A DNA stretch of 64,000 nt. Origin: Macrostomum lignano (taxonomy: Eukaryota). The stretch covers positions 1-64,000 of the forward strand of contig NIVC01000004.1 of the NCBI GenBank assembly GCA_002269645.1, in the 5' to 3' direction. Both the position numbers and the translations under genes were made by a program. How positions within the stretch are numbered: the stretch's first letter is position 1; each line of letters starts with the position of its first letter. The notes under the pieces are model-generated. The model had not been told where the DNA came from. It searched no databases and saw nothing but the letters and a program-made list of their open reading frames with translations. Shown in pieces: positions 1 to 38,904 of the stretch.

Positions 1-535
1 AGGAGAGAGATTGACGAGGGAGAGAGATTGACGAGGGAGAGAGATTGACAAGGGAGAGAGATTGACAAGGGAGAGAGATTGACGAGGGAGAGAGATTGAC
101 GAGGGAGAGAGATTGACGAGGGAGAGAGATTGACGAGGGAGAGAGATTGACGAGGGAGAGAGATTGACGAGGGAGAGAGATTGACAAGGGAGAGAGATTG
201 ACGAGGGAGAGAGATTGACGAAGGGAGAGAGATTGACAAGGGAGAGAGATTGACAAGGGAGAGAGATTGACGAGGGAGAGAGATTGACAAGGGAGAGAGA
301 TTGACAAGGGAGAGAGATTGACGAGGGAGAGAGAAAAGATTGACAAGGGAGAGAGATTGACAAGGGAGAGAGATTGACGAGGGAGAGAGATTGACAAGGG
401 AGAGAGATTGACAAGGGAGAGAGATTGACAAGGAGAGAGAATTGACGAGGGAGAGAGATTGACAAGGGAGAGAGATTGACGAGGGAGAGAGATTGACGAG
501 GGAAAGAGATTGATGAGGGGGAGAGACTGACGAGG
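1..535. repeat. 17-bp minisatellite (GAGGGAGAGAGATTGAC)n, about 31 units, runs off the window start
   Basis: Direct tandem repetition with GAG/AAG variants. Confidence 0.97.
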
Positions 536-623
536 CTATACGAGGATGTTGCACAGCAGAGATAGCGAAGCCGAGAAAGCATTGGTAAAAGAAGTTTGCC
601 ACAGTGGGAGGCGGTGGCGGCTG

Positions 624-3600: not shown

Positions 3601-6600
3601 GCGACAGAAATCTGCGGCGAGGGGCAGGGAGCTGGGAGAGTGAGGCACAGTCAGACTGTCAGACATTAGCGTGAACAGTGAACAGTGAACATTGAACATT
3701 GAACAGTGAACAGTGAACAGTGAACAGTGAATTTTCAGTGATGTGATAGCACCGCTCGCAAATTTTGCTCAACACTTCCTGTAAACAATCTCACCATTTG
3801 GGCAATTGAGAACTGAGACTGAAATAGTAGAATAGTAGCACAACTCAATTACAAAGAATCTGTTTCTCGGAAACCAATCGAAGCTACTAGATCGTAGTAG
3901 AGTAAGAAATTCGTTTCTTAGAAAGCTCGAAAGCAAAAATTCACTAGAGAGATAGAAACTTTCATATTTTTTCTGCTCAAAGCGTCAGCTTTTCATTGGA
4001 GCGGATCAAATGCTCATATTTTAACATGACAGCCTGTTTAAAAGCTTGACAATCCCCTGCTTGCAAAAGCACAGCTCTCTGCTCGCTACTCACTTGTTGA
4101 ACGCCTCTTCCTTGGTTGCCGGGGTGGCGGCCGGCCGCCTCTTCGGCTTGATGTCGCCGTCGCGCAGCATCCGCAGCTCGCGCTCCCGGCTGGCGATGGT
4201 GCCGAAGGCGGCCTCGCGAGCCAGCCTCTCCTCGACATCGTCAGGCTCCTCCTCCAGCGGATCCGGGTCGGCGAACGCATCGAAGCTGTGCGCCGGCCGG
4301 CAGGCGAGCAGCCGCTGCCTGTCCGGGAAGGGCAGCTCGGCCAGCAGCCGCGCGTCCATCTCGCCGCTGAGCGGCTCCGGTGCGGCCGGCTCGAAGTGCA
4401 TCATAGCCATCCGGCGGGTCTGCATCTTCGGCAGGTAGCGCCGGTGCTCGATGCCGTACAGGCTGGCGCCGATGCCCAGCAGCAGGTCGCCCGTGTCCGA
4501 GCAGAAGGCGACGCCCTGCGGCCGGGCGTGCAACTGGACGGCCTTCAGCAGCTGGTTGGCGCTGCTCCACACCCGCAGGGTGCCGTCTTGGCTGACCGTG
4601 GCGAACAGGCGGAGCTTCGGGCAGGCGGCGGCGCCGGTGAGCTTGTCCAGGTGGTCGTCCTCCGGGCTGTGGTCCTGCCGGCTCTTGTCCTCGAGGTCGT
4701 ACGTCACCACGCTGTACGTGGCGGACTGGGCGTCCTGCAATTGTGTAGCGATTCAGCATCAGCCATGTCAGCCACGGAGCAGCCGATGTTGCCTTTACTA
4801 TAAGTAGCCTATCAAACATTTGAGAACAGCTCTGACCACCCTGATCGCTGCTTGCACACACCTGGAAGCCGACCAGCAGCAGCGACCGCAGCGCGCTCAT
4901 GCACACCGGGTGTGCGCGCAGAAGAACTGCATGAGCGGCGCCAGCGCCTCGCGCACGAACGGGAACACCCGCCACACCCGGATGATGTTGTCCAGGCCGG
5001 CCGACACCACCTGGTCCTGGCTGGGGTTCGCCTCCAGCTCCAGCACGCCTTTGTTGCCGTGCCCGTCCACCGCGTAGTCCGGGCCCTGCTCTCCGTAGGT
5101 GCACAGGCTGCCGTCGGCGCGCCCGGCCACCAGAAGCGACTTGCTGGCGCCGCCGCCGGCCGCGTATTCGTACAGAGCCAGGCAGCGGCACTCGCAGCCG
5201 GGCCCGGGGCTTGGCCAGCTGCGCAGCAGGCGGGCCGGCCGGCTGTCCGGATCCCACTCGGCCAGGGAGCCGTCGGACATGGCGCAGTATAGCCGGTGCC
5301 GCTTCGGGTCCGTGCTGTAGGCGGATGCGGCCACCTGCGGTGGAGTAGTGGGGGGCGTTAGTCCTAGCTACACTTCAATTTTGGTTGCGGTTTTTGAAGG
5401 CCGATTTGTACTATCGCCGCTTGACTTATAAACAAAAGTGCCCTTAGCCCAGGGGCTAGCGCTAGCCCTGCAAGTTAAGCTGAGTTGGTCATGGTTAGTA
5501 AGCAGCCGAATTAGCAACTGTAGTGAGCAAGTGGTCACTTAATCGTTGCTGCAGTTCACTCCACAGTGTTAGGGTGGCAGCTCTGAGCTGCAGTTCACTC
5601 CGCAGTGATAGGGTGGCAGCTCTGAGCTGCAGTTCACTCCGCAGTGATAGGGTGGCAGCTCTATTGCAGCGGAACGGATGTATTTATCTTTTTTTGCGAT
5701 TTTCAGAATGCAGCAAGCCTAGCTTACACTGTCGCGACAGTCTACTGACAACAGTAGAAAGTGAAAAAATTTTTATTTCATTCAATTTGCACCAACCTGC
5801 GGCGCTTCTCCGGCAAGCACGGAGCCGCCGGCCAGAGCGGAGGACAGAATCGCCCCGGTGGCCGGCGAGACGACGTGCACGCTGGAGTCCTGGCAGGTCA
5901 CCAGCACCCTGGGCGGCTGGCCGGGCCTCGGTGGGCTGGCCTGGATGCGCAGCACCGGGGCGCACAGGCTGGCCCGGTGAGTGTAGATCTCCTGGACTCG
6001 CCAGGCGCGGACGGACCGAGCGCCAGACGTGTAGAAGGCGGCGGCGCCAACTGAGCGGCCAGACGGAGCGGCGTCTCGGCATCGGGGTCGGCGGCGGAGT
6101 CGAGGCGAACCTCGTCCACCTGAGGGGTGGATTAGCAGATCACTGTTTACTGTTCACACTGCTCACCGTTCACACTGTTCACTGTTCACTGTTCACACTG
6201 TTCACTGTTCACATTGTTCACTGTTCACACTGTTCACTGTTCACACTGTTCACTGTTCACACTGTTCACTGTTCACACTGTTCACTGTTCACACTGTTCA
6301 CTGTTCACACTGTTCACTGTTCACTGTTCACACTGTTCACTGTTCACACTGTTCACTGTTCACACTGTTCACTGTTCACACTGTTCACTGTTCACACTGT
6401 TCACTGTTCACACTGTTCACTGTTCACACTGTTCACTGTTCACACTGTTCACTGTTCACTGTTTACTGTTCACTGTTCACACTGTTCACTGTTCACACTG
6501 TTCACTGTTCACACTGTTCACTGTTCACACTGTTCACTGTTCACTGTTTACTGTTCACACTGCTCACTGTTCACACTGTTCACTGTTCACACTGTTCACT

Positions 6601-8405
6601 GTTCACTCTTCACACTGTTCACTGTTCACTCTTCACACTGTTCACTGTTCACTGTTCACACTGTTCACACTGCTCACTGGTCACACCGTTCACTGTTCAC
6701 TGTTCATACCGTTCACTGTTCACTGTTCACACCGTTCACTGTTCACTGTTCACTCTTCACACTGTTCACACTGTTCATGGGTCCCAGTCAATGACCTGTG
6801 TGGGTCACAGATCCCAGCTCATGAATCTCTTCCTTTGCACCGCCCCGAAGCGCACCTGATCCCGCAGCTCCAGGTGCCAGACCCGCACGCTGCGGTCCTC
6901 CGAGGCGGACAGCAGCATGGGGCCGGTGGGATAAAAGTGCAACGCGTTCACCGCGCCGTTGTGCCCGACGAAGACGCAGTGCACCCGGAAGGTGTCGGCC
7001 ACCCAGGCCTTGACGCTGCCGTCTTTGGCTCCGGTGCACAGCAGCTTCATCGGGTTGAAGAAGTGCACGGCGCTGATGGCGTCCGAGTGCAGGTCGCGGT
7101 GCACGGCCGCGCACTGGCCCTGCTGCAGCAGCAGCACATGGACGCTGCGGTCCATGGCGCAGAAGGCGCGCTGCCGCTTGGCCGCTGTGTCCTCCAGTGC
7201 CACCAGGCTGAAGCCGCGGTCAGCTGGCAGGCCGGCCTGCAGGCGCCGCCGAGGCAGGAGGTGCCGATTGCCGAAGCGGAACACCCAGCTGGTGATCTGG
7301 CCGGGCTCGAAGCTCAGCACCTCCTCCTTGTTGCCGTTGTAGAGCACCTGCGGATTGAATTTAAAGCAGAGGGGGCGCCAGCTACAGAGGGGATGCCAGC
7401 TACAGAGGGGTGCCAGCTACAGAGGGGTGCCAGCTACAGAGGGGTGCCAGCTACAGAGGGGCGCCAGCTACAGAGGGGCACCAGCTACAGAGGGGGTGCC
7501 AGCTACAGAGGGGTGCCAGCTACAGAGGGGCGCCAGCTACAGAGGGGCGCCAGCTACAGAGGGGTGCCAGCTACAGAGGGGTGCCAGCTACAGAGGGGTG
7601 CCAGCTACAGAGGGGCGCCAGCTACAGAGGGGTGCCAGCTACAGAGGGGTGCCAGCTACAGAGGGGTGCCAGCTACAGAGGAACGTATTCTTTGCATTAC
7701 TTATTTGCCTATTTAGCATTTTAAGATCGGTCCATGCAAGCAACATTTTCGGCTTTCTAAAGAATTCCTCGTTGGTGTTGTTAATCGGGGTGCCTAGCAG
7801 TGCTCGTTGGTGAAAACCAGTTCAAATAAAAAAAGATAAAATAAGCGAAAACAGTTTGTCTACTAACAGTAGTGCTAATAGGCAAGCAACCGCTATTGGG
7901 TTAAATTACAATAGAAAACATTCGGCTCTCAAACCTGAGTCAGCGGCGCCTCGGTGGTGGCTTCGGTCAGAACGGCGAACTCGCCGCTGAGGTTAATCAG
8001 CGTTCGGCCGCCCTCCGTCCAGCCGACGAACTGGCCGACGTGGCTGGCGTAGGCCAGCCGGGCGATCGGCTTGGGCGGCGCCACCACGTCGGCCAGGCGG
8101 CCCTCGGAGTCGTAGAAGCGGAGGAAGGCGCCGTCCAGCGTCAGCAGAGGATTCGGCAGCTGCGGCAGCAGCAGAAAGTCGGTGATTGGCTGGGCGTGGC
8201 TCAGGCTGCGGCCAGGCACGATGCCGTGGGACACGAACAAGTTCAGTGCGTCCTCCTTCATGATGTCGTCCGAGACGCTCTTGACGCAGTTGCGCAGCAC
8301 CCGCCAGCGGTATTCGACGGCCGACTCGCCATTGATCATGCGGGGCTTCTTGGGCCGATCGAGCAGGCTGTGCCGCTCCAGCAGGTCCTCCACCACGTGG
8401 CTCAT
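624..8405 (-). CDS. WDR97: WD40-repeat protein WDR97 (KIAA1875)-like, 9 exons, disrupted in this sequence by 1-nt frameshifts
   Basis: Exons with GT-AG borders: 8405-7935, 7347-6856, 6119-5797, 5334-4862, 4734-4094, 3611-3104, 2722-2276, 2116-1660, 1436-about 624. The exon2/3, 4/5 and 8/9 phases fit only after the indel corrections. WD repeats (LCTGAKDGSVKAW, LLSASEDRSVRVWHL, VVSAGLDNIIRVWRVFPF, LFATVSQDGTLRVW). Segments RVWRVFPF..EAL, SATYSVVTY, DHSPEDD..D..TG...CP.L.LFA and AFCSDTGDLLL resemble my recollection of vertebrate WDR97. The 3' end is ambiguous (in-frame TGA at 849-851). Confidence 0.8.
3671..3730. repeat. (GTGAACA)n heptamer array in WDR97 intron 5
   Basis: About 8-9 units. It is the reverse complement of the unit in the 6139-6777 array. 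Confidence 0.9.
5548..5663. repeat. 39-bp tandem repeat, about 3 units, WDR97 intron 3
   Basis: Unit GCTGCAGTTCACTCCGCAGTGATAGGGTGGCAGCTCTGA, starting at 5548, 5587 and 5626. Confidence 0.9.
6139..6777. repeat. TGTTCAC/TGTTCACAC composite microsatellite filling WDR97 intron 2
   Basis: Mixed 7- and 9-bp units. It produces the spurious ORFs 5523-6794 and 6214-7716. Confidence 0.97.
7368..7680. repeat. 17-bp minisatellite (GGGGTGCCAGCTACAGA)n, WDR97 intron 1
   Basis: About 18 tandem units, ending about 20 nt from the acceptor. Confidence 0.95.
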
Positions 8406-21700: not shown

Positions 21701-24277
21701 ATGCAGCCAATCCCTCTGTTACTTGGCACCCTGGTTGCAGTTGCATTCGCTAGCAGTGACTGGAACTCAAATTTCGACGAGAGACTTATAACGCACACAA
21801 GAAACGACGCCGGTTACGCTCAACAGCCCGACGATGTGACAGTGCTGGTGCCACGACCCGGAGCTGGACGGTTCGTTGGATTCCTTACCGGGGTGTCGCA
21901 ATTTCCGAACGAAATGACGGGTGACCCGGCCAAGAATGTTTCCGCATTCCTGGGCATCCCGTACGCTGCCAAGCCAACTGGCAGGCTGCGCTTTCGTCTG
22001 CCACGGCCGGCCTACTTGGACTCCCGAGGACGCTGGCTAGCACGTCGCTATGGCAACGCGTGCCTACAGGGCGCCTATCGCTTTCGCATGGAGGCGCTCA
22101 ACCTCTCCTTGGACCAGTTCTCGGAAGATTGCCTGTACCTAAATTTGTTTGTATCTGGAAACGCAAGCGAAGCATCGCAGGCGAAACTACCTGTGCTACT
22201 GAATATCCACGGCGGAACTCTTCTCGTTGGTGGACCTCACGGCTACCCAGGCCAGGTGCTGGCCTCCAAGGGCATCGTCATGGCAACGCTCTCCTACCGG
22301 TTGAATATATTTGGCTTGATTTCGACTGGGACCTACTCAGCGCCTGGCAACCTCGCTCTGTGGGACCAGCGTGCGGCTCTCATGTGGATTCGCGATAGCG
22401 TTGAGTTCTTCGGTGGCGATCCAGGCCGAGTGACCCTGAGCGGGGAGAGCGCCGGCGGCTCGTCAGTCGGACTTCACATTGTGTCCAACGGTCGATTTCT
22501 GAACGGCGGCCGACCGCTGTTTCACCAGGCGGTGCTCATGAGCGGTGCCGACATCGCTAATTGGGCCGTGTCGAGACCTGTCATCGGTGACCACGAGGGC
22601 TCCATCGATTATATTGCTGGCTTTGTCGGCTGTTCCAGGTCTTCAGTAGCCGCCACAATGAGCTGCCTTGCCAGCGTATCCGCCTACGAGATTGACAAAT
22701 GGAGCTTAAAGCGCCGGGAGGATACCACTGAGCCTGAATGGCTCTGGGCTCCTGTAGTCGACGGTGTCCTCATCGGTGATATTCCGCTGGTGCTGCGAAA
22801 GAATGGCGATTTCATGAAACTGCCCATCATGGGAGGCTTTACCAGAGATGACACTGTGAGAAGCGACTTTATAGAGGAGGAAAGCGTTCGAAACATCCTC
22901 TTTGACGAACTCACGAAAAGGGGCACTAAAATGGTAAGACATTGGTTCTCTAGCTGATATTGGGTTCAGTACCAGCAGCTTTCCACTAGCTGACAGGCCG
23001 GCAAACTCCGGCCCGCTGGCCACATGCTGCCCACAGAGCCTCTCTACCCGGCCCGCTGGCCACATGCTGCCCACAAAGCCTCTCTACCCGGCCCGCTGGC
23101 CACATGCTGCCCACAAAGCCTCTCTACCCGGCCCGCTGGCCACATGCTGCCCACAAAGCCTCTCTACCCGGCCCGCTGGCCACATGCTGCCCACAAAGCC
23201 TCTCTACCCGGCCCTCGGGTCCTTTAAAAAATTCAAAAAAGCATCTGGCCCTCTCCATGATTGTCTCTCTTCTCAACTCCCTTTTCTCTAATCCCCTCTC
23301 TCTCTCATTTCCTCTTCTCTTTTTTCTCTCATCTCCTTTTCTTCGCTCCTCTCTCATCTCCTCCTTTTCTCTTCTCTACTCCTATCCTCTCCCTTCTCTC
23401 CTCTACCTCTCTCCACTCCTCTCTCATTTCCTCTCTCCTCTTGTTCTCTCTCTTCTCTCCTTTCCCCCTTCGATTTCATCCCTCCTCTCGTCTCCTCTTT
23501 TCTCCTTTATTCCTCGCCTCCCTTCCGGAGCCTTGAAGTAAAAAAGTTTGCCGACCTCTACACAAGCAGAAATTTGACGTCCCGCAGATTCCCGGCATAG
23601 AGGCCATAGTTGAAGAAGCCATCAAGGTTTACCTGCAAGGCAAGCGAAGCGCCAGCAGCCGGGCAGAGATGTTCCAGCTGATGAAGAATGTGACGCGAGA
23701 CTACGAAATGATCCAGCCGGTGTACCAGGCGCTGCGTTTCCACGCCAATCGGCAAGACTCTCGACAGCCCGTCTTCCTGTACGAATTCGGGTACGAAAAG
23801 CGGTTTCAGTGGCCGCCTGAAGTCAGGCACGGCGACGACTTGGACTACATTTTAGGAGTGCCGTTTGTCTCGTCCGACTGGTGGCAGCGCGTCAGCGGCG
23901 AGGCGGATCTCGACAAATTCAATAAGTTCAACACGACCGAGCAGCGGCGCCTGAGCGACTTCATGACGACGCTGTGGACAAACTTTGTGAAATTCGGCAA
24001 CCCGACGCCAACGCCGGTGCGTGGCTTCAAGTGGGATCGCTTGACGCCCCGCAGCAACTCGGACTCGCCCGTCCCTTGCGCCATTCTCAACTTGCCAGAG
24101 CTCACCAGCGTAACACCTGATTACAAGCGCAAGGAGATGCAGCTGTGGAAGAGGTTCTATGACCTTGAGCTGCAGTACGTGCTTCAGCTGAGCAGTGGAG
24201 AGTCGTCAGGCGCTACTTCCGCGGTCCTGCTGGCGATTGGGTCTGCAGCTGCCCTGCTGGCCAGACTGCTTGCCTGA
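21701..24277 (+). CDS. Type-B carboxylesterase/cholinesterase-family protein, about 640 aa, signal peptide and probable GPI anchor
   Basis: Exons 21701-22933 and 23588-24277 (phase 0, GT-AG). FLGIPYA, SEDCLYLN, HGG, GESAG nucleophile elbow, acid residue in GGFTRDD (Asp), HGDDL His, WTNFVKFGNP. Hydrophobic C-terminal tail with no cytoplasmic domain. Confidence 0.93.
23008..23214. repeat. 40-bp tandem repeat x5 in the esterase intron, followed by a CT-rich tract to about 23520
   Basis: Unit CCGGCCCGCTGGCCACATGCTGCCCACAAAGCCTCTCTAC. Confidence 0.95.
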
Positions 24278-28305: not shown

Positions 28306-31079
28306 GTTGGTAGCTGCCACCAAGACTATTCTAATAAATTATGGGTTTATTAATCTTAGAATAAGTCTTAGAATATTTCTTAGAATAGGTCTGAGTATTT
28401 AGTCTAAGTATTTAGTCTGAGTATTATTCTTAGAAAACTGTTAGCCTTAAAGATTTTATTCCTCTGTTATTCTGGTAGTGTTTCTGTTATTCTAGTAGTG
28501 TTCTATTATTCTGGTAGTATTCTACTTAATAATTTGGCCTGAGTGGTATTTTGGCTTACTGGTATATGTATTTCATGTACTTTGCAAGTCCTTGGGCATT
28601 ACCAAGATCAGAGGGTCACAGCCTCCAGTTATTCTTACACATATTATTTCAGATCTACTTCGCAATTTTTTACTACTCAATGTTGCTGCTTCTCAGTAGT
28701 AATGTATTGTATTTGCTTTGGTCTACTTTGCTCTTACTTAAAAAGAATTAACACAGGAAAACACTTCTTCAATTATATTTTCTCAGAACTCTTATTATTA
28801 GCTATCAACTGTTTTGTTAGTGAACTATGATGTGCAAAGTTGGTTCTTCCTCCGCCAAAAATGCTTCTATTTATATTAAAATTCTTATACATTTTTACAA
28901 AAATTCGTTAGTGTAAAATATTATAGAAAATACAAGTATTAAAACAAAATGTGTTTCTTAGTTTTGGCATAAATTTAAATTGCAATAAATGATAAAGTTA
29001 CTATTTTATAGAAAATCAGGAGGGGCCCTATACAATTATAAAACTAGGCCTAGGCTGCCTAGTAATAGTATGTAGCCCTTATTGAAAATAAAGAATGCAT
29101 CAATTTAATGTAGTTTCCTGTTTTTCAAAGCAAAATCATCATTAAGTTGTAAAATCTATTTCATCTTTTTATTTTTATTAGAAAAAAGAAAAAAAATTGT
29201 ACCAAAAAGTATTTATAATATAATTTAATGATTATGCCTATGGTTATAATTTTTTAAGCTTTTTTTTTCTTGTGCATTTTTTGAAACAATGTTTGAATGT
29301 ATTTTCTACTTTTGTTCATAGGCCTATTATTAATTATTGTTAATGGCATACATAGCATGTAGTTGGCAAACATGTATATAGTAGGCATGCAAACAAAAAA
29401 CTTCCAGGTATACATTCTGGCATGCATCCAACATGATCTAAAATATTTAGGTTGGGATAGAGGAATGAAAATTGGCAATTTTTGGGCAGTTGGTTTGTTG
29501 ATACCAAAATAAGGCAGCCTTAAAATTTTGAATTTCTATAAGCATTGAGTTCAAACAAATATTTCTAGAAATTGCACAGACAAATCCCAATGCCACAAAT
29601 TTTTTTTCCTATTTTACTCCAGCTACTAGGTCCACAATTCCGGGGGGGAGGGTAGTTGTTATTATAGGTAAGTGGTCTTTGTTAGGCATGGTCATTTGAA
29701 TTATGTCCTTTGATACTAAAATCAATATAAATCAAAATTCTCAATGGGTATGTTCTGGCACTATCTACTAGCAGAGCAGACACCAAGGAGCATTGATGCA
29801 TTCTCTTCCCTGCCAAGTTGCTTGATGGAACCCCTCTTTGAGGGCATTCTTCAGTCAGATGTAGGCTGGTATATGCCAGTGGTGGTTGCTGTGTAGGCGC
29901 AGTGTGTCAGCCTTGTTGAGGCAGAACTATGTTGCTGGGGTAGGTGAGGCCTTGGGGCTGGTCGCAGTGGAACTTGCGCTTGCTCCATTTGGTACAGGAT
30001 GGTCAGACATCATCTTGATGGCAATAACAAGCTAGGACAAATACCAAGTGGGCAAATAATGATTGAACAGGTATGAATAACAAGATAGCAAAAAGCCAAA
30101 TGGTAAATTATTAACTGTGGTGGCAGGAGAAACAAAGTTTAAAAAAGTTGACATAGTGAAATTAAATGCTTAAATACTCCTATGGCTGGCTAGATAAAAT
30201 ATGTCTAGCTAGACAAAATATGGCCACTGTCGCAAACACCCCCGCTGTGCACTCCAATTGAGGTTACGCCTGGAGATTGGGGTAGAGAAAAAGCAAGGTG
30301 CAATAAAATGATAAACCACAAGATATAGGTGTCTAGGGTTTAAGCTGCATACCAAATTAATTGAATGAGAGACTCCAATAGTCTCACATGAATGGGAGTT
30401 GCATCTGGAAAGAACTTTGCAAACATTTAGAATTAGACAAATGACTGTAAGGCAGCAATTTAGGGCTTCATATTAGATTTGTTGGATAGTATGATACTAA
30501 CCGAAATAATAGGCATGGGTTTCCATAAGGAGTTACACAAAAAAGGGAGAAAAAGACACTAGAAAAATTTTCCTAGGCTTGGGCTTGATTGTAACATAGA
30601 TTTGGGGAGCTATAATTCATCTCAGATGCCCCCACTGGGGACATAGCCTCGAACAAAGAGGACCTATAACCCAAGTGCAGCAGGACACTAAAATTAAATA
30701 GATCAGTTAGATGAGAAATTTACTTTCAGCTCATTAACTGAAGCTGAGAAGGTTTACAAATAATTCAGATTTGTGTAGTTCATGCAGCAAAAAGAGAGAG
30801 GAAAATGATACTTTTAGCACTTTGGACGTGTGTAGAGAAATTTTACAGTAAGGGGTTTCGCAAAACAGAAGGGATAATTCACACTGAGAGTTATTAAAAT
30901 GCATGCACATTCTTCTGTCTGCAAAAACACATCTTGGCTACAATAGAGTATATAATTAAGAATTTTTATAATTGAAAACAAAGCCAAGCTAAAAAACAGC
31001 CATGCAAAGTTGTAATCCAAGCCTGGCTTGAATTTCTCTTGCATGCTAGTGGCTTTCACTAACTTCAATTTATCGCATC

Positions 31080-32801
31080 ATGTCTGCCGATGTCGCCAGC
31101 TCCGAGGTGGCCGCGCCCGACCTCGACGCCGAGGCTTCTTCAACAGCAGCTGCTGCGGTGGCGGATTCGACAGCGGGTGATCAGCAGGCACCGACTCCTC
31201 CAGCAGCCAACGGCGCTGTTGATGTTGACGAAGGCGCATCGTCGGGCCCTGCCGATCATCCAGAGCCCGATAGCCGAGCTGCCGCCGCTGGCGAAGCCGG
31301 AGCCAGCGTTGAAGGCCTCGGCGGTGGCGGCGACGACGCTGAAAAGCCGGAGGACGCGGCCGACGAGGTGTCGGAGGCGCCAGCGCCGGCGCCGAATTCC
31401 TCAGGCGTGGCGGCGGGCCACAACAACGAGGAGGCGGACGAAGAGGAAGAGGAGGAGTCGGACGAGGACATCAACGTGATCATCAACAAGGCGGACACGG
31501 CCAACCCCAACACGGCCTTCAACCGGCAGCAGCAGCAGTCGGCCGCCGGCAAATCAAAGCGCGCCGGAGCTGCTGCTGGCGGCGGCGGCGGCGGCCAGCG
31601 AACGGCGGTCGATCTGGACAATCCGGGCAACATCGGCGGCGCGCCCACCATCGATTACAACGTGGCCAGCCTGCGCGAGGAGGAGAAGCCGTGGACCCGG
31701 CCTGGCGCTGACATTGCCGACTATTTCAACTACGGCTTCAACGAGGAGTCCTGGGTGGCCTACTGCGAGAAGCAGCGCCTGCTGCGGGCCCAGAACGGCG
31801 GCCGGCTGCCCTCGGTGATGACCGACCCGCTGCAGCCGTTCCGTCCGACACGCCGGGGCGGCGGTGGCGGTGCCGATTCGCATGGCCAGCAGTTGCAGCA
31901 GCAGCACGACAGGCATGAGCGGCAGCAGCACGACAGGCACGAGCGGCAGTCGGAGCGGCAGCACCAGCCGCAGCGGTCCGCCATCACTGTCATCGGGGCC
32001 ACGTCTGGCGATAATCGACGGCCCCGCCGCGACTCTCAGGGCCAGGACGGCGGCAACGTTCCCCGCATGATTCCCACTCTGGGTGGCGGTGGCGGCGGCG
32101 GCGGTGGCGCTCCGTTTCTTCAGCACCACCCGCCGCCGATGCAGCCGCACCTGCAGGGCCCAATGCAGCTGCCGCCGGCCGCTGCGGCCGCCTTCGGCTT
32201 CATTCCGCAGTCCTCGACTGCCCAATTCGTGCCAATGACGGCCGCCCCGCCGCCGCCTCAGCCGGGGTTTATGCCGGGCCCGGGCGTGCTGGCCTATCCA
32301 GGCATGCCGCCGCCGCAGGTGCCCTGGACTGCCGCGCCGCCACCGCAGATGCCGCCGCCACCCCCGGTGTCCGCGGCCAGCTACGCTGGAGAGGCTCTGC
32401 ATCAGCAGCAGCCAATGCAGCAGCAGCAGCAGATGATGGAGCAGAAGCCGGACCCACCAGCGGGACCAGCTGGCCACCTGGTCAGCCTCACCGGCAATGC
32501 GGGACAGCCGAGCGTTTCTGCCGCCTCCACTGCTGCCGCAGCTTCAGCCGGCTTGAGCGACGCTGCCCCCGCCCCCGCCGCCGCTTCAGCTTCGAGTTCG
32601 TCGCGCGAGCGTCGTCGCCGCCGCAGCAGGAGCCGCAGTCCGCCCGCCGAGTCGTCTTCGTCAAGCCGCAGCCGGAGCAGCCGCCAGCATCAGCAGCAGG
32701 AGGCCAGCAGCGGCGGCTCGCGCAGGCAGCAGCGCTCCCGTTCCCGTAGCGGCGAGCGGCGCCGTCGCGGCAGCCGCGAACGGGGGGAGCGCAGGAAGTG
32801 A
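31080..32801 (+). CDS. FIP1L1: Pre-mRNA 3'-end processing factor FIP1, 573 aa, intronless
   Basis: Acidic N-terminus, Fip1 motif [31 protein letters not shown], Pro-rich middle, RS/RE-rich tail. Confidence 0.95.
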
Positions 32802-33095
32802 ATTAATTTAAACGGGCTCGCATACTACTGGTAGTAGAAATTGTTGAAACTGAATGAATTTTGCAAGGCAAAGCCTTACTCAGCTATTTTAATAATTAAC
32901 ATTACTGTCTCCGGTCATACGACTGATGAAGCTGCTTAGCATTTGTCCTTTTTTGTCTGATCGCCCTTCCCCAATGTTCTAGTTTCCATTGGCGTTAGTC
33001 CGCTGTGTGCATGTAAATATACTTTAAAATGTGTTCGCTAATTGTTTTGTTGCACTGCTTCCGCTGTCCGGCTTTGTTAATGCTGATGTGACCAG

Positions 33096-33101
33096 AATAA
33101 A
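33096..33101 (+). promoter_or_regulatory. Probable FIP1 polyadenylation signal AATAAA followed by a U-rich tract
   Basis: First AATAAA after the FIP1 stop (295 nt downstream). T-rich sequence follows to about 33190. Confidence 0.6.
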
Positions 33102-33266
33102 TGACAACTTTGGAAACTGTTCGTATCTGCTGAAAATTTACTTTTTTGCTGATGTGTTTCTGCTTTCGTTATTTTATTTCCAATTTTCTTATGAAAGCTC
33201 TGGCAAACCGGCTCCGAAGTCTAAAATATGCGCTGCTAAGCAGGATTTCCGCACTCTGAATTGCAG

Positions 33267-33479
33267 GCCAACCAGGAGAAAAAGTCCGCTCCCGAGCGGC
33301 TGGTGGGCAAGCTGTCCTCAGCCCTGCCCGCCTTCACCGATCTGTTCGACGAAGAGACTTTCTACATTTTCTTCTTCTGCATTGTGATTGTATCGTTTGC
33401 TATCGCCTTTCTGGCTGCCCGGGTGTTCCGCATCAAACTGGTTGACGCGGACGAGGCCGAGCACAAGCACTCCAGCTGA
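33267..33479 (+). CDS. Small single-pass membrane protein (about 70 aa) with no genomic ATG, starting at a 3' splice acceptor
   Basis: TTGCAG|GCC AAC CAG... gives ANQEKKSAPERLVGKLSSALPAFTDLFDEETFYIFFFCIVIVSFAIAFLAARVFRIKLVD. The P.FTD.FDEETFY + TM pattern resembles a small conserved invertebrate protein I recall but cannot name. In-frame TAA at 33237-33239 upstream. Confidence 0.7.
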   Translation, partial: ANQEKKSAPERLVGKLSSALPAFTDLFDEETFYIFFFCIVIVSFAIAFLAARVFRIKLVDADEAEHKHSS

Positions 33480-33577
33480 TGCGGCTAGCCGATGGAACAT
33501 GGCGCTGCCAACAACTTAGCATCTCTTCCTCTAATTGCTGTGCAGCCACCCATCCGCCTTTGCCCCTTCCTACCCAT

Positions 33578-34262
33578 TGTACACCCACCCCTCCTCCGCC
33601 TCTGCCCCTAACCCTTGTACACCCACTCCTCCGCCTCTGCCCCTAACCCTTGTACACCCACCCCTCCTCCGCCTCTGCCCCTAACCCTTGTACACCCACC
33701 CCTCCTCCGCCTCTGCCCCTAACCCTTGTACACCCACCCCTCCTCCGCCTCTGTCCCTAACCCTTGTACACCCACCCCTCCTCCGCCTCTGCCCCTAACC
33801 CTTGTACACCCACCCCTCCTCCGCCTCTGTCCCTACCCCTTGTGCTCCCATCCCTCATCCGCCTCTGTCCCTACCCCTTGTGCTCCCACCCCTCCTCCGC
33901 CTCTGTCCCTACCCCTTGTGCTCCCATCCCTCCTCCGCCTCTGTCCCTACCCCTTGTGCTCCCACCCCTCCTCCGCCTCTGTCCCTACCCCTTGTGCTCC
34001 CACCCCTCCTCCGCCTCTGTCCCTACCCCTTGTGCTCCCACCCCTCCTCCGCCTCTGCCCCTAACCCTTGTACACCCACCCCTTCTCCGCCTCTGCCCCT
34101 AACCCTTGTACACCCACCCCTCCTCCGCCTCTCCGCCTCTGCCCCTAACCCTTTTACACACACTCCTCCTTCGCCTCTGTCCCTATCCCTTGTGCTCCCA
34201 CCCCTCCTCCGCCTCTGTCCCTATCCCTTGTGCTCCCACCCCTCCTCCTCTGCCCTACCCTT
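33578..34262. repeat. 38-bp C-rich minisatellite, about 17 units
   Basis: Unit TTGTACACCCACCCCTCCTCCGCCTCTGCCCCTAACCC and variants. Confidence 0.95.
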
Positions 34263-34910
34263 TGTGCGCCAACAACAACTTCACCTCCGCTCTCTTCACG
34301 TGTTCTACGAGTACTTTATAAATTACTTTTTGCCACCCTAATCAATTTAAACTTTCCTCATCATGTTTTTCCGACTAAAGTATTATTGTTCTGTAAGAGG
34401 TTAAGAATAAAAAAGTTCTACGTCGCCCCAGTGCTAAGTGGAAAAGGGACCTAGTCAGATCAGTCAGCTTGTGTCAGCTAGTCAGATGATTTTGTGCTTA
34501 AAACTTTTCTGATAACGAATCTTTTAGCCGTACATGTGAATCTGGAATTGAGAGTTTTTTCTGTCTATCAGGCTTCCTACTTCTCATGCTTTTTGCCCCA
34601 ACTCTGCCGTCTAGTCAATGAAGCACATTACTGCTCCTGCCTTATTTATTGTGAATCATAATAAATAGCTAATGCAACTATGCAAGGGACAAGTGTACTT
34701 CGATTCCGCCATATTAATGCAGCTTCAAGCTACAAATGTTTGTCTCTGAGTGATGCCTTCTCCATGTTTTAATGGATGAAACTAGTTAAAAAACCTCTGG
34801 GAATGAAATAATGAGAACTTATATTCGGCTTTAAAATGAAACAGATATCAGAGATCGAATTCGGTTGCAGCAAACAGAAGTGAAGCAAACTATAGGAGGC
34901 TTTCCTGGCT

Positions 34911-35191
34911 GGCAGGTGACATTGGGAGGGATAATTATGTGTGGATTCAGCTGTGTACAATTCAACTCTATGGCCAGGCCGCTGCAGAGCCGGTTGGGTG
35001 CGGGCAGGTGACATTGGGAGGGATAATTATCTGTGGATTCAGCTGTGTACAATTCAACTCTATGGCCAGGCCGCTGCAGAGCCAGTTGGGTGCGGGCAGG
35101 TGACATTGGGAGGGATAATTATCTGTGGATTCAGCTGTGTACAATTCAACTCTATGGCCAGGCCGCTGCAGAGCCAGTTGGGTGCGGGCAG
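34911..35191. repeat. 92-bp tandem repeat x3
   Basis: Units start at 34911, 35003 and 35095 (GGCAGGTGACATTGGGAGG...). Confidence 0.93.
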
Positions 35192-36501: not shown

Positions 36502-36701
36502 TGTACTTTTAAGAGAGTTCTAGTCACAGTTAGTGTTGATTAAGCTGCATGCAGCACTCTAGGGCCATTCTTGATTGCGGACACTTCATTTCGTAGAAAA
36601 ATGTACTTTTAAGAGAGTTCTAGTCACGGTTAGTGTTGATTAAGCTGCATGCAGCACTCTAGGGCCATTCTTGATTGCGGACACTTCATTACGTAGAAAA
36701 A
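36502..36701. repeat. 100-bp tandem duplication
   Basis: TGTACTTTTAAGAGAGTTCTAG... at 36502 and 36602, near identical. Confidence 0.93.
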
Positions 36702-37210
36702 TATGAAAGGCTGCCGATTTCCGAAATCAGCGAGACATAGTGACTGGCCAATTTAGATTGTTAGTCCTGAACTTGTGCAAGAAAAAAGTCTTGAATTCTG
36801 CTCAAGATCGTTGCAGCCTGCGGATGCCTTGTACAGTCGTGCAGTCCTGACCGGACTGGGCATTTCTGCCATCTCAGTTTTCCTCCCTATGCGGCTCAGA
36901 GCATCAATTAGTTTTATGAATTTCGGCGAGTCCGTTTCTGACTTCCAGTTGGTGGGGGGCTGTTGGTAATTGGAAAATCGATCGGCTGTCCCGCCTGCTC
37001 AGCTCCCTGCTGGCGCTGGGGTGACCCAGCAGCCCTCGTGTCTCTCCCAGCTTGTTGGGACTTTACTGACTGGCTGGCAGACACTGGCTTCTGTCTCACC
37101 CAACTCAGTTGGATGGATGATGCGACTTCGCTCTGTTTTCAAAGGCCGTTTGTTAACGCAATCGCTTGGCTTCCATCCACACCCACCCAGATTATCCTTG
37201 CTGCAGTCCA

Positions 37211-37413
37211 GACCGATTCTCTATCTGAATCAGTTCAGCTCAGAGTGCTCATAACTGACCGATTCTCTATCTGAATCAGTTCAGCTCAGAGTGCTCATAA
37301 CTGACCGATTCTCTATCTGAATCAGTTCAGCTCAGAGTGCTCATAACTGACTGATTCTCTATCTGAATCAGTTCAGCTCAGAGTGCTCATAACTGACCGA
37401 TTCTCTATCTGAA
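37211..37413. repeat. 46-bp tandem repeat, about 4.4 units, upstream of the calmodulin-like gene
   Basis: Unit GACCGATTCTCTATCTGAATCAGTTCAGCTCAGAGTGCTCATAACT. Confidence 0.93.
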
Positions 37414-37577
37414 CCGCTGGCCCTAGCACGCATGCACACGGGGGCATCGAACCCAGGTTTCTCTGGCGCCAGATCCGGAAGCGTTTCCGCTGAGCTGATT
37501 TGCCCCTTCCATTTGAACCGATTGCAGCAGCGAACTCGGAGTCAACCGGAATCTATTGCTTCCACTAAACTGTTGCC

Positions 37578-38904
37578 ATGGACACGAAGGGTGAATCGCA
37601 GGGTGGCGGGGCGGCCCGCTCCGATGACAGCCGCACGCCGGTCCGGCTGAACTCGGTGGCCCGGGAGGCGATCACCAGCCAGCTGACCGATGAGCAGATC
37701 GCCGAGTTCAAGGAGGCCTTCGGCCTCTTCGATCGGGACGGCAGCGGCTCCATCACCATCCGAGAGCTCGAGTCCATCATGCGGTCGCTGGGGCAGAATC
37801 CCTCCGAGCGGGAGCTCAAGGTTGGTCCGAAAAAAAGACGGTGATGTACAGCAGCTGAGAAATGGGAGGGATAGAGATGTACAGCAGCTGGGAAATGGGA
37901 GGGATGGAGATGCATGGCAGCTGGGAAATGGGAGGGATGAAGATGTACAGCAGCTGGGAAATGGGAAATGGGAGGGATGGAGATGGACGGCAGCTGGGAA
38001 ATGGGGGGGTGGAGATGCACGGCAGCTGGGAAATGGGAGGGATGGAGATGCACAGCAGCTGGGAAATGGGAGGGATAGAGATGTACAGCAGCTAAAAATG
38101 GGAGCGTTGAAGATGTGCAGCAGCCGGGGAGATGACAGTTGTCATAGAAGAATAGAGCAGCAAACATTTACAGCTTCAATGCAACAACTCAGATTAGACA
38201 CTGAGGGGTGAGGCTGAGCTATCAAGTGAAAACTCAAGAAACAAAAATCTGGAAATTCTAGAAGCATTCCAAGCCGATCCCAAAAGGCGCCCAGCAGGGT
38301 GCATGGGGCGCCAATTTGGATGTAAAAAGGACGGTCATTCGAGTGTCAGGGCGGTAATTTGAGTGCCAGGGCGCCAATTTGAGTGCCAGGGCGCCAACTC
38401 GAGTGTCAGGGCGCCAATTCGAGTGTCAGGGTGCCAATTCGAGTGCCAGGGCGCCAATTTGAGTGCCAGGGCGCCAATTTGAGTGCTAGGGCGCCAATTT
38501 GAGTGCTATGGCGCCAATTAGTGTCAGGGTACTGATTTGAGTGCTAAGGGAGAGTTCTCATACGGAGATCAAGCGCAACTCCCGTTGAATCACAGGACAT
38601 GGTGGAGGGCGTCGACATCGACGGCAACGGAGAGATCGACTTCCCCGAGTTCATGGCGATGATGGCGGAGAAAATCCAGGACACGAACTCCGAGCAGGAG
38701 ATCATAGCCGCCTTCCAGACATTCGACAGGGACTCGAACAGCTATCTTAGCCGTGAGGAGCTGCAGGACGTGCTCACCCGCTTCGGTGACAACAGCATGT
38801 CGGAGGCAGACGTTCGCGAGATGATCGCCGCCGCTGACAAGAATGGCGACGGCAAAATCCAGTACGAGGAGTTCGCGCACTTCATCGCCTCCGTTATTCG
38901 ATGA
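37578..38904 (+). CDS. Calmodulin-like protein, 183 aa, 4 EF-hands with an N-terminal extension
   Basis: Exons 37578-37820 and 38596-38904 (phase 0). [51 protein letters not shown] (loop Gly replaced by Ser), [13 protein letters not shown]. Too diverged to be canonical CaM. Confidence 0.95.
37843..38130. repeat. 33-bp minisatellite in the calmodulin-like intron
   Basis: Unit GATGTACAGCAGCTGGGAAATGGGAGGGATGGA and variants. Confidence 0.9.
38339..38530. repeat. 20-bp minisatellite in the calmodulin-like intron
   Basis: Unit GAGTGCCAGGGCGCCAATTT and variants. Confidence 0.9.

What the first reader, a model, noticed from the sequence alone, without database searches (positions are those of the whole stretch)
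31080..33479. Operon-like FIP1 + AUG-less downstream ORF that may get its start codon from a spliced leader
Seen: a coding-looking 70-codon membrane-protein ORF begins 465 nt after the FIP1 stop on the same strand. It starts exactly at a TTGCAG acceptor in phase 0, has no in-frame ATG, and is closed upstream by TAA (33237). I see no ATG-plus-donor exon in the gap. The gap has AATAAA (33096), then a U-rich tract, then the acceptor about 165 nt later, which is the layout of SL-resolved operons. Established: flatworm spliced leaders end in AUG and can supply the initiator Met. Inference: SL-AUG + GCC AAC CAG gives MANQEKK..., i.e. a dicistronic unit whose upstream gene is itself a cleavage/polyadenylation factor.
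Basis: partly seen in the sequence, partly recalled or inferred. Interest (0 to 1): 0.72.

Follow-up and report, generated by a model that had tools for sequence, protein, structure and literature searches.

The report
Start-codon-less microprotein gene behind FIP1

Summary
The window is Macrostomum lignano (Mlig_3_7, NIVC01000004.1). FIP1 (31080-32801) is a bona fide intronless Fip1-motif gene. The ORF 33267-33479 lies 465 nt downstream on the same strand.

- It starts directly after the only [T/C]TNCAG site in the gap (TTGCAG, 33261-33266).
- It is closed upstream by TAA (33237) and contains no Met codon at all.
- It is a real gene: 68 homologues, the best from trematodes (E 7e-15, 56% identity). 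They form an unnamed family of single-pass membrane microproteins with the motif LPxFTDIFDEETFY.
- Homologues begin with Met 19-21 residues before the invariant Pro. The window ORF has 20, so only the Met is missing.
- No credible cis ATG-plus-donor exon exists.

The published M. lignano spliced leader ends in ATG, and the published trans-acceptor motif matches. Initiation from the leader's AUG is therefore the best explanation (about 0.65). Spacing fits the published operon criterion (under 1 kb), but no RNA data could be reached, so trans-splicing and co-transcription are inferred. FIP1 linkage is not conserved in five other species.

Both phenomena are already documented, so this is a new member of a known kind, of modest interest.

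The parts
31080..32801 (+). FIP1 (FIP1L1-type) coding sequence. It is a single exon of 573 codons plus TGA. The Fip1 motif is at residues 193-236 (31656-31787).
   Evidence: ORF. Pfam PF05182 at E 2.4e-20. The exact protein is annotated in GCA_002269645.1. The frame is closed upstream by TAG at 31047 (read).
32802..33130 (+). Presumed FIP1 3' UTR. It holds the only AATAAA of the gap, at 33096-33101. The cleavage site is inferred to lie about 15-30 nt after that signal.
   Evidence: The cleavage position is inferred, not observed.
33141..33190 (+). T-rich tract (62% T, 78% pyrimidine) between the poly(A) signal and the acceptor. It is a candidate downstream element for FIP1 cleavage and/or a U-rich element ahead of trans-splicing.
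   Evidence: above the 99th percentile of 50-nt windows in the window. Any function is inferred.
33236..33266 (+). 3' splice-site region. It has a branch-like CTAAG (33236-33240, which overlaps the in-frame TAA), the pyrimidine-rich TTTCCGCACTCT, and the acceptor TTGCAG (33261-33266).
   Evidence: TTGCAG matches the published M. lignano trans-acceptor motif [T/C]TNCAG. Use of this site by the spliced leader is inferred.
33267..33479 (+). ATG-less coding exon of a conserved single-pass membrane microprotein: 70 codons plus TGA. The family motif LPAFTDLFDEETFYIFFF lies at 33324-33377. The uncharged transmembrane stretch T31-A51 lies at 33357-33419. The predicted product after leader addition is M-ANQEKKSAPER...
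   Evidence: ORF; 68 homologues, best E 7e-15; alignment; all near-invariant residues kept; N-terminal length matches the family.
33480..34430 (+). Presumed 3' UTR of the small gene. It contains a 38-bp tandem array of 17.8 copies (33569-34248). The next AATAAA is at 34406-34411.
   Evidence: The UTR extent is inferred.

Best explanation
The 33267-33479 ORF is the single coding exon of a functional M. lignano gene for a conserved small single-pass membrane protein. The gene has no genomic initiator codon. I infer the following mechanism. The pre-mRNA is cut at the TTGCAG acceptor (33266|33267) by spliced-leader trans-splicing. The 35-nt leader (...TTATTGCATG) is joined directly to GCC AAC CAG. 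The leader's 3'-terminal AUG then becomes codon 1, in frame and with G at +4, giving MANQEKK... Expression of the protein therefore depends on trans-splicing.

The most likely source of the pre-mRNA is read-through from the FIP1 transcription unit, that is, a two-gene operon resolved by cleavage/polyadenylation after AATAAA 33096 and trans-splicing about 140-165 nt further on. This second step is less certain than the first.

Shown here: the sequence anatomy, the gene's reality and completeness, the absence of cis alternatives, and agreement with published M. lignano signals. Inferred: the trans-splicing event itself, translation from the leader's AUG, and co-transcription with FIP1.
For: 1. 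Organism and leader: the window is NIVC01000004.1 of Mlig_3_7. The M. lignano leader CGGTCTCTTACTGCGAAGACTCAATTTATTGCATG ends in ATG. 30% of its genes are trans-spliced, and the top acceptor motif is [T/C]TNCAG placed exactly at the junction.
2. TTGCAG is the only such motif in the 465-nt gap and ends exactly in phase 0. An in-phase site in the 9 open codons is expected about 3% of the time by chance.
3. The ORF is a real gene: 68 homologues at E<1e-3, with the best from the flatworms Trichobilharzia, Echinostoma and Clonorchis (56% identity, E 7e-15). Others come from a cestode, a bryozoan and Diptera. All near-invariant residues are kept.
4. Only the Met is missing. Homologues have 19-21 residues before the invariant Pro in 14 of 27 cases (mode 20). 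The window ORF has 20, or 21 with the leader's Met.
5. There is no Met codon anywhere in the ORF. The gap has only two phase-0 ATG...GT combinations, with donor matches of 2/8 and 4/8. There is no GT[AG]AG donor anywhere in FIP1 or the gap.
6. Codon bias starts at the acceptor: GC3 is 0.77 in the ORF against 0.44 in the nine codons upstream.
7. Precedent: more than 40 Schistosoma cDNAs and several Echinococcus cDNAs need the leader's AUG to match orthologue N-termini.
8. Operon layout: same strand; about 165 nt from AATAAA to the acceptor; a T-rich tract in between. The published intergenic mode in M. lignano operons is about 100 bp with a cut-off of 1 kb, and 18% of operons start with a non-trans-spliced gene. 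The gap is unique sequence, not a repeat.
Against: - No RNA evidence was reachable. The protein is absent from the 15-billion-protein collection in any form, including transcriptome-derived contigs. It is not annotated in the GenBank record. However, that annotation excluded transcripts overlapping repeats, and the presumed 3' UTR carries a 680-bp tandem array.
- In all other loci examined the ATG is genome-encoded. The ATG-less state is therefore derived, and could instead be a recent start-codon loss (ATG to TTG at 33261) in one copy of a neopolyploid genome.
- FIP1 linkage is not conserved.
- An independent promoter inside the FIP1 3' UTR cannot be excluded.
Confidence: 0.65

Rival explanations
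1. The mRNA is the same (leader's AUG plus the ORF), but there is no operon. The small gene has its own promoter within or just after the FIP1 3' UTR. It makes a short outron that trans-splicing removes, and FIP1 transcripts terminate independently.
For: About 60% of trans-spliced M. lignano genes are not in operons (abstract and Results of PMC8629364). Linkage to FIP1 is not conserved in other species. A/T-rich TATA-like strings occur in the gap, for example CTAAAATATG at about 33220.
Against: Only about 140-165 nt lie between the FIP1 poly(A) signal and the acceptor, which is near the mode of operon spacers. No promoter model for this species was available, so nothing positive supports a promoter here.
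Confidence: 0.22
2. This is a recently disabled copy. The TTG at 33261-33263 was an ATG (MQANQEKK...). It mutated in one of the duplicated copies of this neopolyploid genome, so the ORF is an intact-looking but untranslated pseudogene. The TTGCAG 'acceptor' is then a by-product of that mutation.
For: - The TTG is in frame two codons upstream. An ATG there would give 22 residues before the invariant Pro, still within the family range.
- All other family members examined have a genomic ATG.
- 79% of BUSCO genes are duplicated in M. lignano (PMC10468722), so redundancy would tolerate the loss.
- The gene is absent from the GenBank annotation and from the protein collection.
Against: - The site has a full 3' splice-site look: branch-like CTAAG at about -28, a pyrimidine-rich stretch, and the published consensus hexamer in exact phase.
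- There are no frameshifts or stops, and every near-invariant residue is retained.
- Codon bias begins at 33267, not at 33261. This rests on few codons.
- Trans-splicing affects 30% of genes, so the prior for an acceptor here is high.
Confidence: 0.08
3. A cis-spliced upstream micro-exon provides the ATG. The nearest candidate is ATGACT|GTAAGG at 30441-30446, which would give MT-ANQEKK... FIP1 would then lie inside a 2.8-kb first intron.
For: This is the nearest phase-0 ATG followed by a GT[AG]AG donor. The resulting N-terminal length would fit the family.
Against: Such two-codon ATG-plus-donor combinations occur about once per 5 kb here, which is chance level. The candidate sits in AT-rich sequence with several upstream ATGs and no coding signal. 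It also requires a whole same-strand gene nested in the intron.
Confidence: 0.03
4. Translation starts at a near-cognate codon (UUG 33261) on a conventionally capped, non-trans-spliced mRNA.
For: There is an in-frame TTG with G at -3. Non-AUG starts are documented in ribosome-profiling studies cited in PMC9851317.
Against: From general knowledge, UUG is a weak initiator, and +4 here is C. The hexamer is a consensus acceptor in a species whose leader supplies a perfect AUG. Out-of-frame upstream ATGs (33192, 33228) would precede the UUG on any transcript that starts further 5'.
Confidence: 0.02

Closest known systems
Flatworm mRNAs that use the spliced leader's 3'-terminal AUG as initiator Met (Cheng, Cohen, Ndegwa & Davis 2006, J Biol Chem 281:733; later called 'slORFs', PMC9851317)
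   Same: The leader ends in AUG and the acceptor sits at a codon boundary. The genomic ORF lacks its own AUG, and the orthologue N-terminus is matched only if the leader's AUG is used. This is the same argument used for Schistosoma and Echinococcus cDNAs.
   Different: This case is in a free-living macrostomorph rather than in Neodermata. It is inferred from genomic sequence only, with no leader-bearing cDNA. The papers on M. lignano and Macrostomum trans-splicing that I read do not report leader-AUG-dependent genes. They only note that the final ATG is likely part of the leader.
Spliced-leader-resolved operons of Macrostomum lignano (Ustyantsev & Berezikov 2021, PMC8629364; 'transcriptional units' of Wudarski et al. 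2017, PMC5730564)
   Same: Two same-strand genes lie under 1 kb apart. The downstream gene starts at a [T/C]TNCAG acceptor. The upstream gene may be non-trans-spliced, as in 18% of the published operons.
   Different: Published membership needs mapped leader-bearing reads at the downstream gene, which I could not check. The spacer of about 140-165 nt from the poly(A) signal is slightly longer than the roughly 100-bp mode.
C. elegans-type operons (SL2, U-rich Ur element between cleavage site and trans-splice site)
   Same: The layout is AAUAAA, then a U-rich tract, then the acceptor about 100-170 nt later. From memory, genes for mRNA 3'-end and processing factors are common in nematode operons.
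   Different: M. lignano has a single leader with no SL2-type specialisation. Nematode leaders do not end in AUG. No Ur-type element has been defined in flatworms.
Unnamed LPxFTDIFDEETFY single-pass membrane microprotein family (e.g. UniProt A0AA85KLL1 Trichobilharzia regenti 'Transmembrane protein', A0A183BGZ1 Echinostoma caproni, A0A8T1MJI2 Clonorchis sinensis, A0A7J7JJG6 Bugula neritina)
   Same: Length is 60-100 aa. A basic N-terminal segment is followed by the invariant P..F.D.FDE..FY motif leading into one transmembrane helix, then a basic flank and an acidic 'DAD/DAG' tail. Identity to the trematode proteins is 51-56%.
   Different: The M. lignano gene has no genomic ATG, whereas the others do. 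The family has no Pfam model, no solved structure and no known function.

Membership tests
Leader-AUG-initiated flatworm mRNA (Cheng et al. 2006 type) | The species has a spliced leader whose last three bases are AUG | tested here: met
   The window is M. lignano. The published leader ends ...TTGCATG, and the final ATG is noted as a likely part of the leader in Macrostomum.
Leader-AUG-initiated flatworm mRNA (Cheng et al. 2006 type) | A trans-splice acceptor lies directly 5' of the ORF, in phase with it | tested here: met
   TTGCAG at 33261-33266 matches [T/C]TNCAG. It is the only such site in the gap and is in phase 0. This shows the motif only, not its use.
Leader-AUG-initiated flatworm mRNA (Cheng et al. 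2006 type) | No genomic in-frame AUG is able to give the conserved N-terminus; orthologues are matched only with the leader's AUG | tested here: met
   The ORF has no Met. There is no credible cis ATG exon. The N-terminal length is 20 (+1), against a family mode of 20.
Leader-AUG-initiated flatworm mRNA (Cheng et al. 2006 type) | A leader-bearing transcript is observed at the site | not testable with these tools
   No M. lignano transcript data were reachable. Exact and homology look-ups were empty. Paper supplements had no entry.
Leader-AUG-initiated flatworm mRNA (Cheng et al. 2006 type) | Translation is shown to start at the leader's AUG | not testable with these tools
   This needs N-terminal proteomics, ribosome profiling or a reporter assay.
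M. lignano operon (Ustyantsev & Berezikov 2021 criteria) | Adjacent genes on the same strand with no opposite-strand gene between them | tested here: met
   FIP1 and the ORF are both on the + strand. The gap holds only short chance ORFs and no RNA genes.
M. lignano operon (Ustyantsev & Berezikov 2021 criteria) | Repeat-adjusted intergenic distance under 1 kb | tested here: met
   The distance is 465 nt from stop to acceptor, and about 165 nt from AATAAA to the acceptor. The gap is unique sequence.
M. lignano operon (Ustyantsev & Berezikov 2021 criteria) | The downstream gene carries mapped leader-bearing reads | not testable with these tools
   No read data were available.
M. lignano operon (Ustyantsev & Berezikov 2021 criteria) | A polycistronic precursor spans both genes | not testable with these tools
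   This needs RT-PCR, long-read cDNA or nascent RNA.
Fip1 / FIP1L1 (upstream gene) | Fip1 motif (PF05182) above the Pfam gathering score | tested here: met
   72.2 bits against a cut-off of 22.7, E 2.4e-20. The motif is flanked by an acidic N-terminal region, a Pro-rich middle and an Arg/Ser-rich tail.
LPxFTDIFDEETFY membrane microprotein family (unnamed) | Conserved P..F.D.FDE..FY motif immediately followed by one transmembrane helix, with total length about 60-100 aa | tested here: met
   P21, F23, D25, F27, D28, E29, F32 and Y33 are all present. The uncharged stretch is T31-A51. Length is 70 aa.

The most novel reading that the evidence does not exclude
In the Macrostomum lineage, a microprotein gene conserved across protostomes lost its ancestral genomic ATG. 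Its expression now depends entirely on the spliced leader's AUG. Because it sits as the downstream cistron behind FIP1, a cleavage/polyadenylation factor, its output would be coupled to how efficiently FIP1's own poly(A) site is processed. That would be a built-in read-out, or feedback, of 3'-end-processing activity. If the weak leader-like 13/14 match in front of the FIP1 ATG is real, FIP1 would additionally be an intronless retrocopy of a trans-spliced mRNA that inserted upstream and created the operon.
Probability: 0.1. Interest if true: 0.55.

Novelty: new member of a known kind. Interest (0 to 1): 0.3.

Why it matters
The mechanisms are already known. Leader-donated start codons were described in flatworms in 2006, and operons in M. 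lignano in 2017-2021. The value here is local.

1. It identifies an apparently unannotated, conserved microprotein gene. ATG-dependent gene callers miss it, and it is absent from the GenBank annotation of Mlig_3_7. More genes of this kind are probably missing from flatworm proteomes.
2. It gives a clean, experimentally tractable example, in the only flatworm with stable transgenesis, of a gene whose translation should depend entirely on trans-splicing. That makes it useful as a reporter for leader-AUG initiation outside the parasitic Neodermata.
3. It shows that the ATG-less state is derived, because relatives in trematodes, a cestode and a bryozoan keep a genomic ATG.

Tried and rejected
- Word-indexed protein searches with the small ORF, full FIP1 and the non-repetitive part of FIP1 gave nothing useful. 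There were no M. lignano paralogues, and low-complexity sequence swamped the FIP1 query.
- Exact look-ups of MANQEKK... and of the TTG-start version found no contig. FIP1 itself occurs on one contig only.
- I tried to reach the paralogous M. lignano locus through the neighbouring two-exon EF-hand protein. No paralogue or Macrostomum orthologue could therefore be compared.
- A scan of metagenome contigs for the first 23 nt of the ORF gave one hit. It is a chance match inside a GC-rich bacterial-looking gene.
- Supplement searches of three M. lignano papers for FIP1 or the scaffold were empty.
- Pfam, Rfam, tRNA and PDB-profile searches on the ORF, the window or the family returned no family, RNA or structure.
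- Rejected: the ORF as an alternative 3' exon of FIP1. There is no GT[AG]AG donor in FIP1. The only 6/8 donor-like site (GAA|GTGAAT, 32798) is in phase 2 and would read the wrong frame.
- Rejected: a cis ATG exon in the gap.
- Judged chance level: the 2-codon ATGACT|GTAAGG at 30441.
- Considered: a spliced-leader relic in front of FIP1. The local 13/14 match is the best leader hit in the window. The full-length alignment is unexceptional (score 8 against up to 11 at other ATGs; 145 of 5000 shuffles reach it). I left it as a side note.
Full report
**Source**

The FIP1 protein encoded at 31080-32801 is found, residue for residue, on one public contig: NIVC01000004.1 of assembly GCA_002269645.1. 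Its contig coordinates are the same as the window coordinates. [quoted passage not shown] The composition fits this source: GC-rich coding blocks (60-70%) sit in AT-rich spacer (33-39%).

**The observation**

- FIP1 is a single 573-codon ORF, closed upstream by TAG at 31047. It has a Fip1 motif at E 2.4e-20.
- Its TGA ends at 32801. The next coding-looking stretch on the same strand starts at 33267, 465 nt later, and runs 70 codons to TGA 33477-33479.
- The frame is closed upstream by TAA 33237-33239, and the peptide contains no Met at all.
- The hexamer TTGCAG (33261-33266) ends exactly at the codon boundary. It is the only [T/C]TNCAG in the gap.
- AATAAA at 33096 is the only canonical poly(A) signal in the gap.
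- Between the two lies a tract of 62% T (33141-33190), above the 99th percentile for the window.
- The gap is unique sequence and holds no Rfam family or tRNA.

**Is the ORF a gene?**

Yes. A full HMMER scan of 1.84 billion representative proteins gave 68 hits at E<1e-3, five of them below 1e-10.
- The best hits are 'uncharacterized' or 'transmembrane' proteins of the trematodes Trichobilharzia, Echinostoma and Clonorchis (56% identity, E 7e-15).
- Others come from the cestode Spirometra, the bryozoan Bugula, the midge Diamesa and unnamed sequencing-run assemblies.
- All are 60-100 aa. They share P..F.D.FDE..FY running into a single hydrophobic helix, followed by basic residues and an acidic tail.
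- The window peptide keeps every invariant and near-invariant residue.
- The family has no Pfam model and no solved relative, so its function is unknown.
- From the charge distribution (acidic before the helix, Arg/Lys after it) I infer an N-out/C-in signal-anchor topology. This is inference only.

**Is anything missing besides the Met?**

No. I counted residues before the invariant Pro in the alignment. The 27 homologues have a mode of 20, and 14 of them fall in 19-21. The window ORF has 20 without a Met and 21 with one added at the acceptor. The coding sequence therefore begins at, or within a residue or two of, 33267. Codon bias agrees: GC3 is 0.77 in the ORF against 0.44 in the nine open codons upstream, although that upstream sample is small.

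**Where could a start codon come from?**

1. *A cis exon in the gap.* Only two phase-0 ATG...GT combinations exist, with donor matches of 2/8 and 4/8 to AG|GTRAGT.
2. *Splicing from FIP1.* There is no GT[AG]AG anywhere in FIP1 or the gap. The single 6/8 site, at the FIP1 stop codon, is in the wrong phase.
3. *A far-upstream micro-exon.* The nearest phase-0 ATG followed by GT[AG]AG is a two-codon ATGACT|GTAAGG at 30441. It lies in AT-rich sequence with several upstream ATGs. Such sites occur about once per 5 kb here, and this one would require FIP1 to be nested in the intron.
4. *The in-frame TTG at 33261*, either as a near-cognate start or as a mutated ATG.
5. *The spliced leader.*

M. lignano has one 35-nt leader, CGGTCTCTTACTGCGAAGACTCAATTTATTGCATG. 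It is found on about 30% of genes, and the most enriched motif at trans-splice junctions is [T/C]TNCAG, positioned at the junction (PMC8629364). Joining that leader to 33267 gives ...UUGC AUG GCC AAC CAG, in frame with G at +4.

Flatworm leaders all end in AUG. That AUG has been shown to serve as initiator Met, and more than 40 Schistosoma cDNAs require it. In Echinococcus, 4 of 8 tabulated cDNAs need it to match orthologue N-termini (Cheng et al. 2006 as reported in PMC9851317 and PMC3510090). The argument used in those papers is exactly the one that applies here.

An in-phase consensus acceptor within the nine open codons is expected by chance about 3% of the time (frequency 0.0033 per nt). 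The site also has a branch-like CTAAG about 28 nt upstream and a pyrimidine-rich run. I therefore rank option 5 first, at about 0.65 for the operon version given as the best explanation. Adding the own-promoter variant, which makes the same mRNA, brings it to roughly 0.85.

**Operon or not?**

- The published M. lignano criterion is two same-strand neighbours, the second trans-spliced, under 1 kb apart after removing repeats. The spacer mode is about 100 bp, and 18% of operons begin with a non-trans-spliced gene.
- Here the spacer is about 140-165 nt from the poly(A) signal or cleavage region to the acceptor. It is unique sequence and contains a strong T-rich tract.
- This meets the spacing criterion and leaves little room for a promoter. 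The defining evidence, leader reads and a spanning precursor, could not be obtained.
- About 60% of trans-spliced genes in this species are not in operons, so a promoter overlapping the FIP1 3' UTR remains a real alternative (0.22).

**Comparison with relatives elsewhere**

I examined five homologue loci: T. szidati, Clonorchis, Spirometra, Bugula and an unidentified sequencing-run contig.
- None carries a Fip1 gene within the fetched flanks, which were up to 10 kb. This is judged from the called genes with Pfam marks and from a DYFNYGF codon-pattern search of the loci held at that time.
- Where I read the start, the ATG is genome-encoded.
- In Spirometra a TTGCAG lies 25 nt upstream of the ATG, so a leader AUG would be out of frame there.
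- The ATG-less state and the FIP1 neighbourhood are therefore lineage-specific. This keeps alive the rival that one copy in this neopolyploid genome recently lost its ATG (ATG to TTG). I rate that at 0.08, because it would have to create a consensus acceptor in exact phase by accident.
- I could not fetch the paralogous M. lignano copy or Macrostomum orthologues. That comparison is the best purely computational next step.

**Why the gene is missing from public protein sets**

The ORF has no entry in the 15-billion-protein collection or in the GenBank gene calls. Two ordinary reasons suffice. Gene callers need an ATG. The GenBank submission also dropped transcripts overlapping repeats, and the presumed 3' UTR contains a 38-bp tandem array of 17.8 copies. 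Absence is therefore weak evidence against expression.

**Verdict**

The leader-AUG reading is the best-supported explanation on sequence and comparative grounds, but remains an inference without RNA data. The operon reading is plausible and meets the published spacing rule, but is unproven. Both phenomena are already documented in flatworms, so this is a new member of a known kind. It has modest value for annotation and as an experimental handle.

Noticed in passing
window 31061-31082: The sequence directly before the FIP1 ATG, TCAATTTATCGCATCATG, matches the 3' end of the M. lignano spliced leader (TCAATTTATTGCATG) at 13 of 14 positions, in the same reading phase. It is the best local leader match in the whole window on either strand (score 23, next best 21). 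FIP1 is also intronless. The full-length alignment is unexceptional (145 of 5000 shuffles reach it). This may be an eroded leader relic of a retrocopied trans-spliced mRNA, or it may be chance.
   Followed up: partly
window 33569-34248: A 38-bp pyrimidine-rich tandem repeat (consensus CCTAACCCTTGTACACCCACCCCTCCTCCGCCTCTGTC), 17.8 copies at 91% identity, lies directly downstream of the small ORF and inside its presumed 3' UTR. It creates long spurious ORFs in several frames.
   Followed up: partly
window 37578-38904: A two-exon EF-hand (calmodulin-like) gene lies on the + strand: exon 1 at 37578-37820 (donor AAG|GTTGGT) and exon 2 at 38596-38904 (acceptor CACAG). A TTGCAG site at 37520-37525 lies 52 nt upstream of its ATG, which could be another trans-splice acceptor. 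Its intron holds 33-40-bp tandem repeats (37843-38000) and a further array of GGGCGCCAATT[TC]GAGTG[CT]CA-like units from about 38300.
   Followed up: partly
window 34911-35191, 36502-36702, 37211-37413: Three further tandem arrays (92 bp x3.1, 100 bp x2.0, 46 bp x4.4, all 98% identical) lie in the 3-kb spacer between the small gene and the EF-hand gene. This fits the published remark that repeats inflate intergenic distances in this genome.
   Followed up: no
window 21701-24277: A carboxylesterase-type gene (PF00135, 640 aa, at least two exons) lies on the + strand, upstream of the AT-rich spacer that precedes FIP1. ATG|GTAAGA at 22931-22936 is a likely donor.
   Followed up: no
L004 8139-8161 (JGI contig Ga0255092_1001192): The first 23 nt of the small ORF occur exactly in a GC-rich bacterial-looking coding region, with no further similarity. 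This shows that a 23-mer can match by chance in a collection of this size.
   Followed up: yes
L007 9970-10003 (Spirometra sp., CM118276.1): The cestode homologue has a TTGCAG site 25 nt upstream of its genomic ATG. If that site is trans-spliced, the leader's AUG would be out of frame and would open a short overlapping upstream ORF.
   Followed up: no
window 1-8000: This stretch has unusually high GC (56-63%), with many long overlapping ORFs on both strands. It probably holds large GC-rich coding exons. I did not examine it.
   Followed up: no
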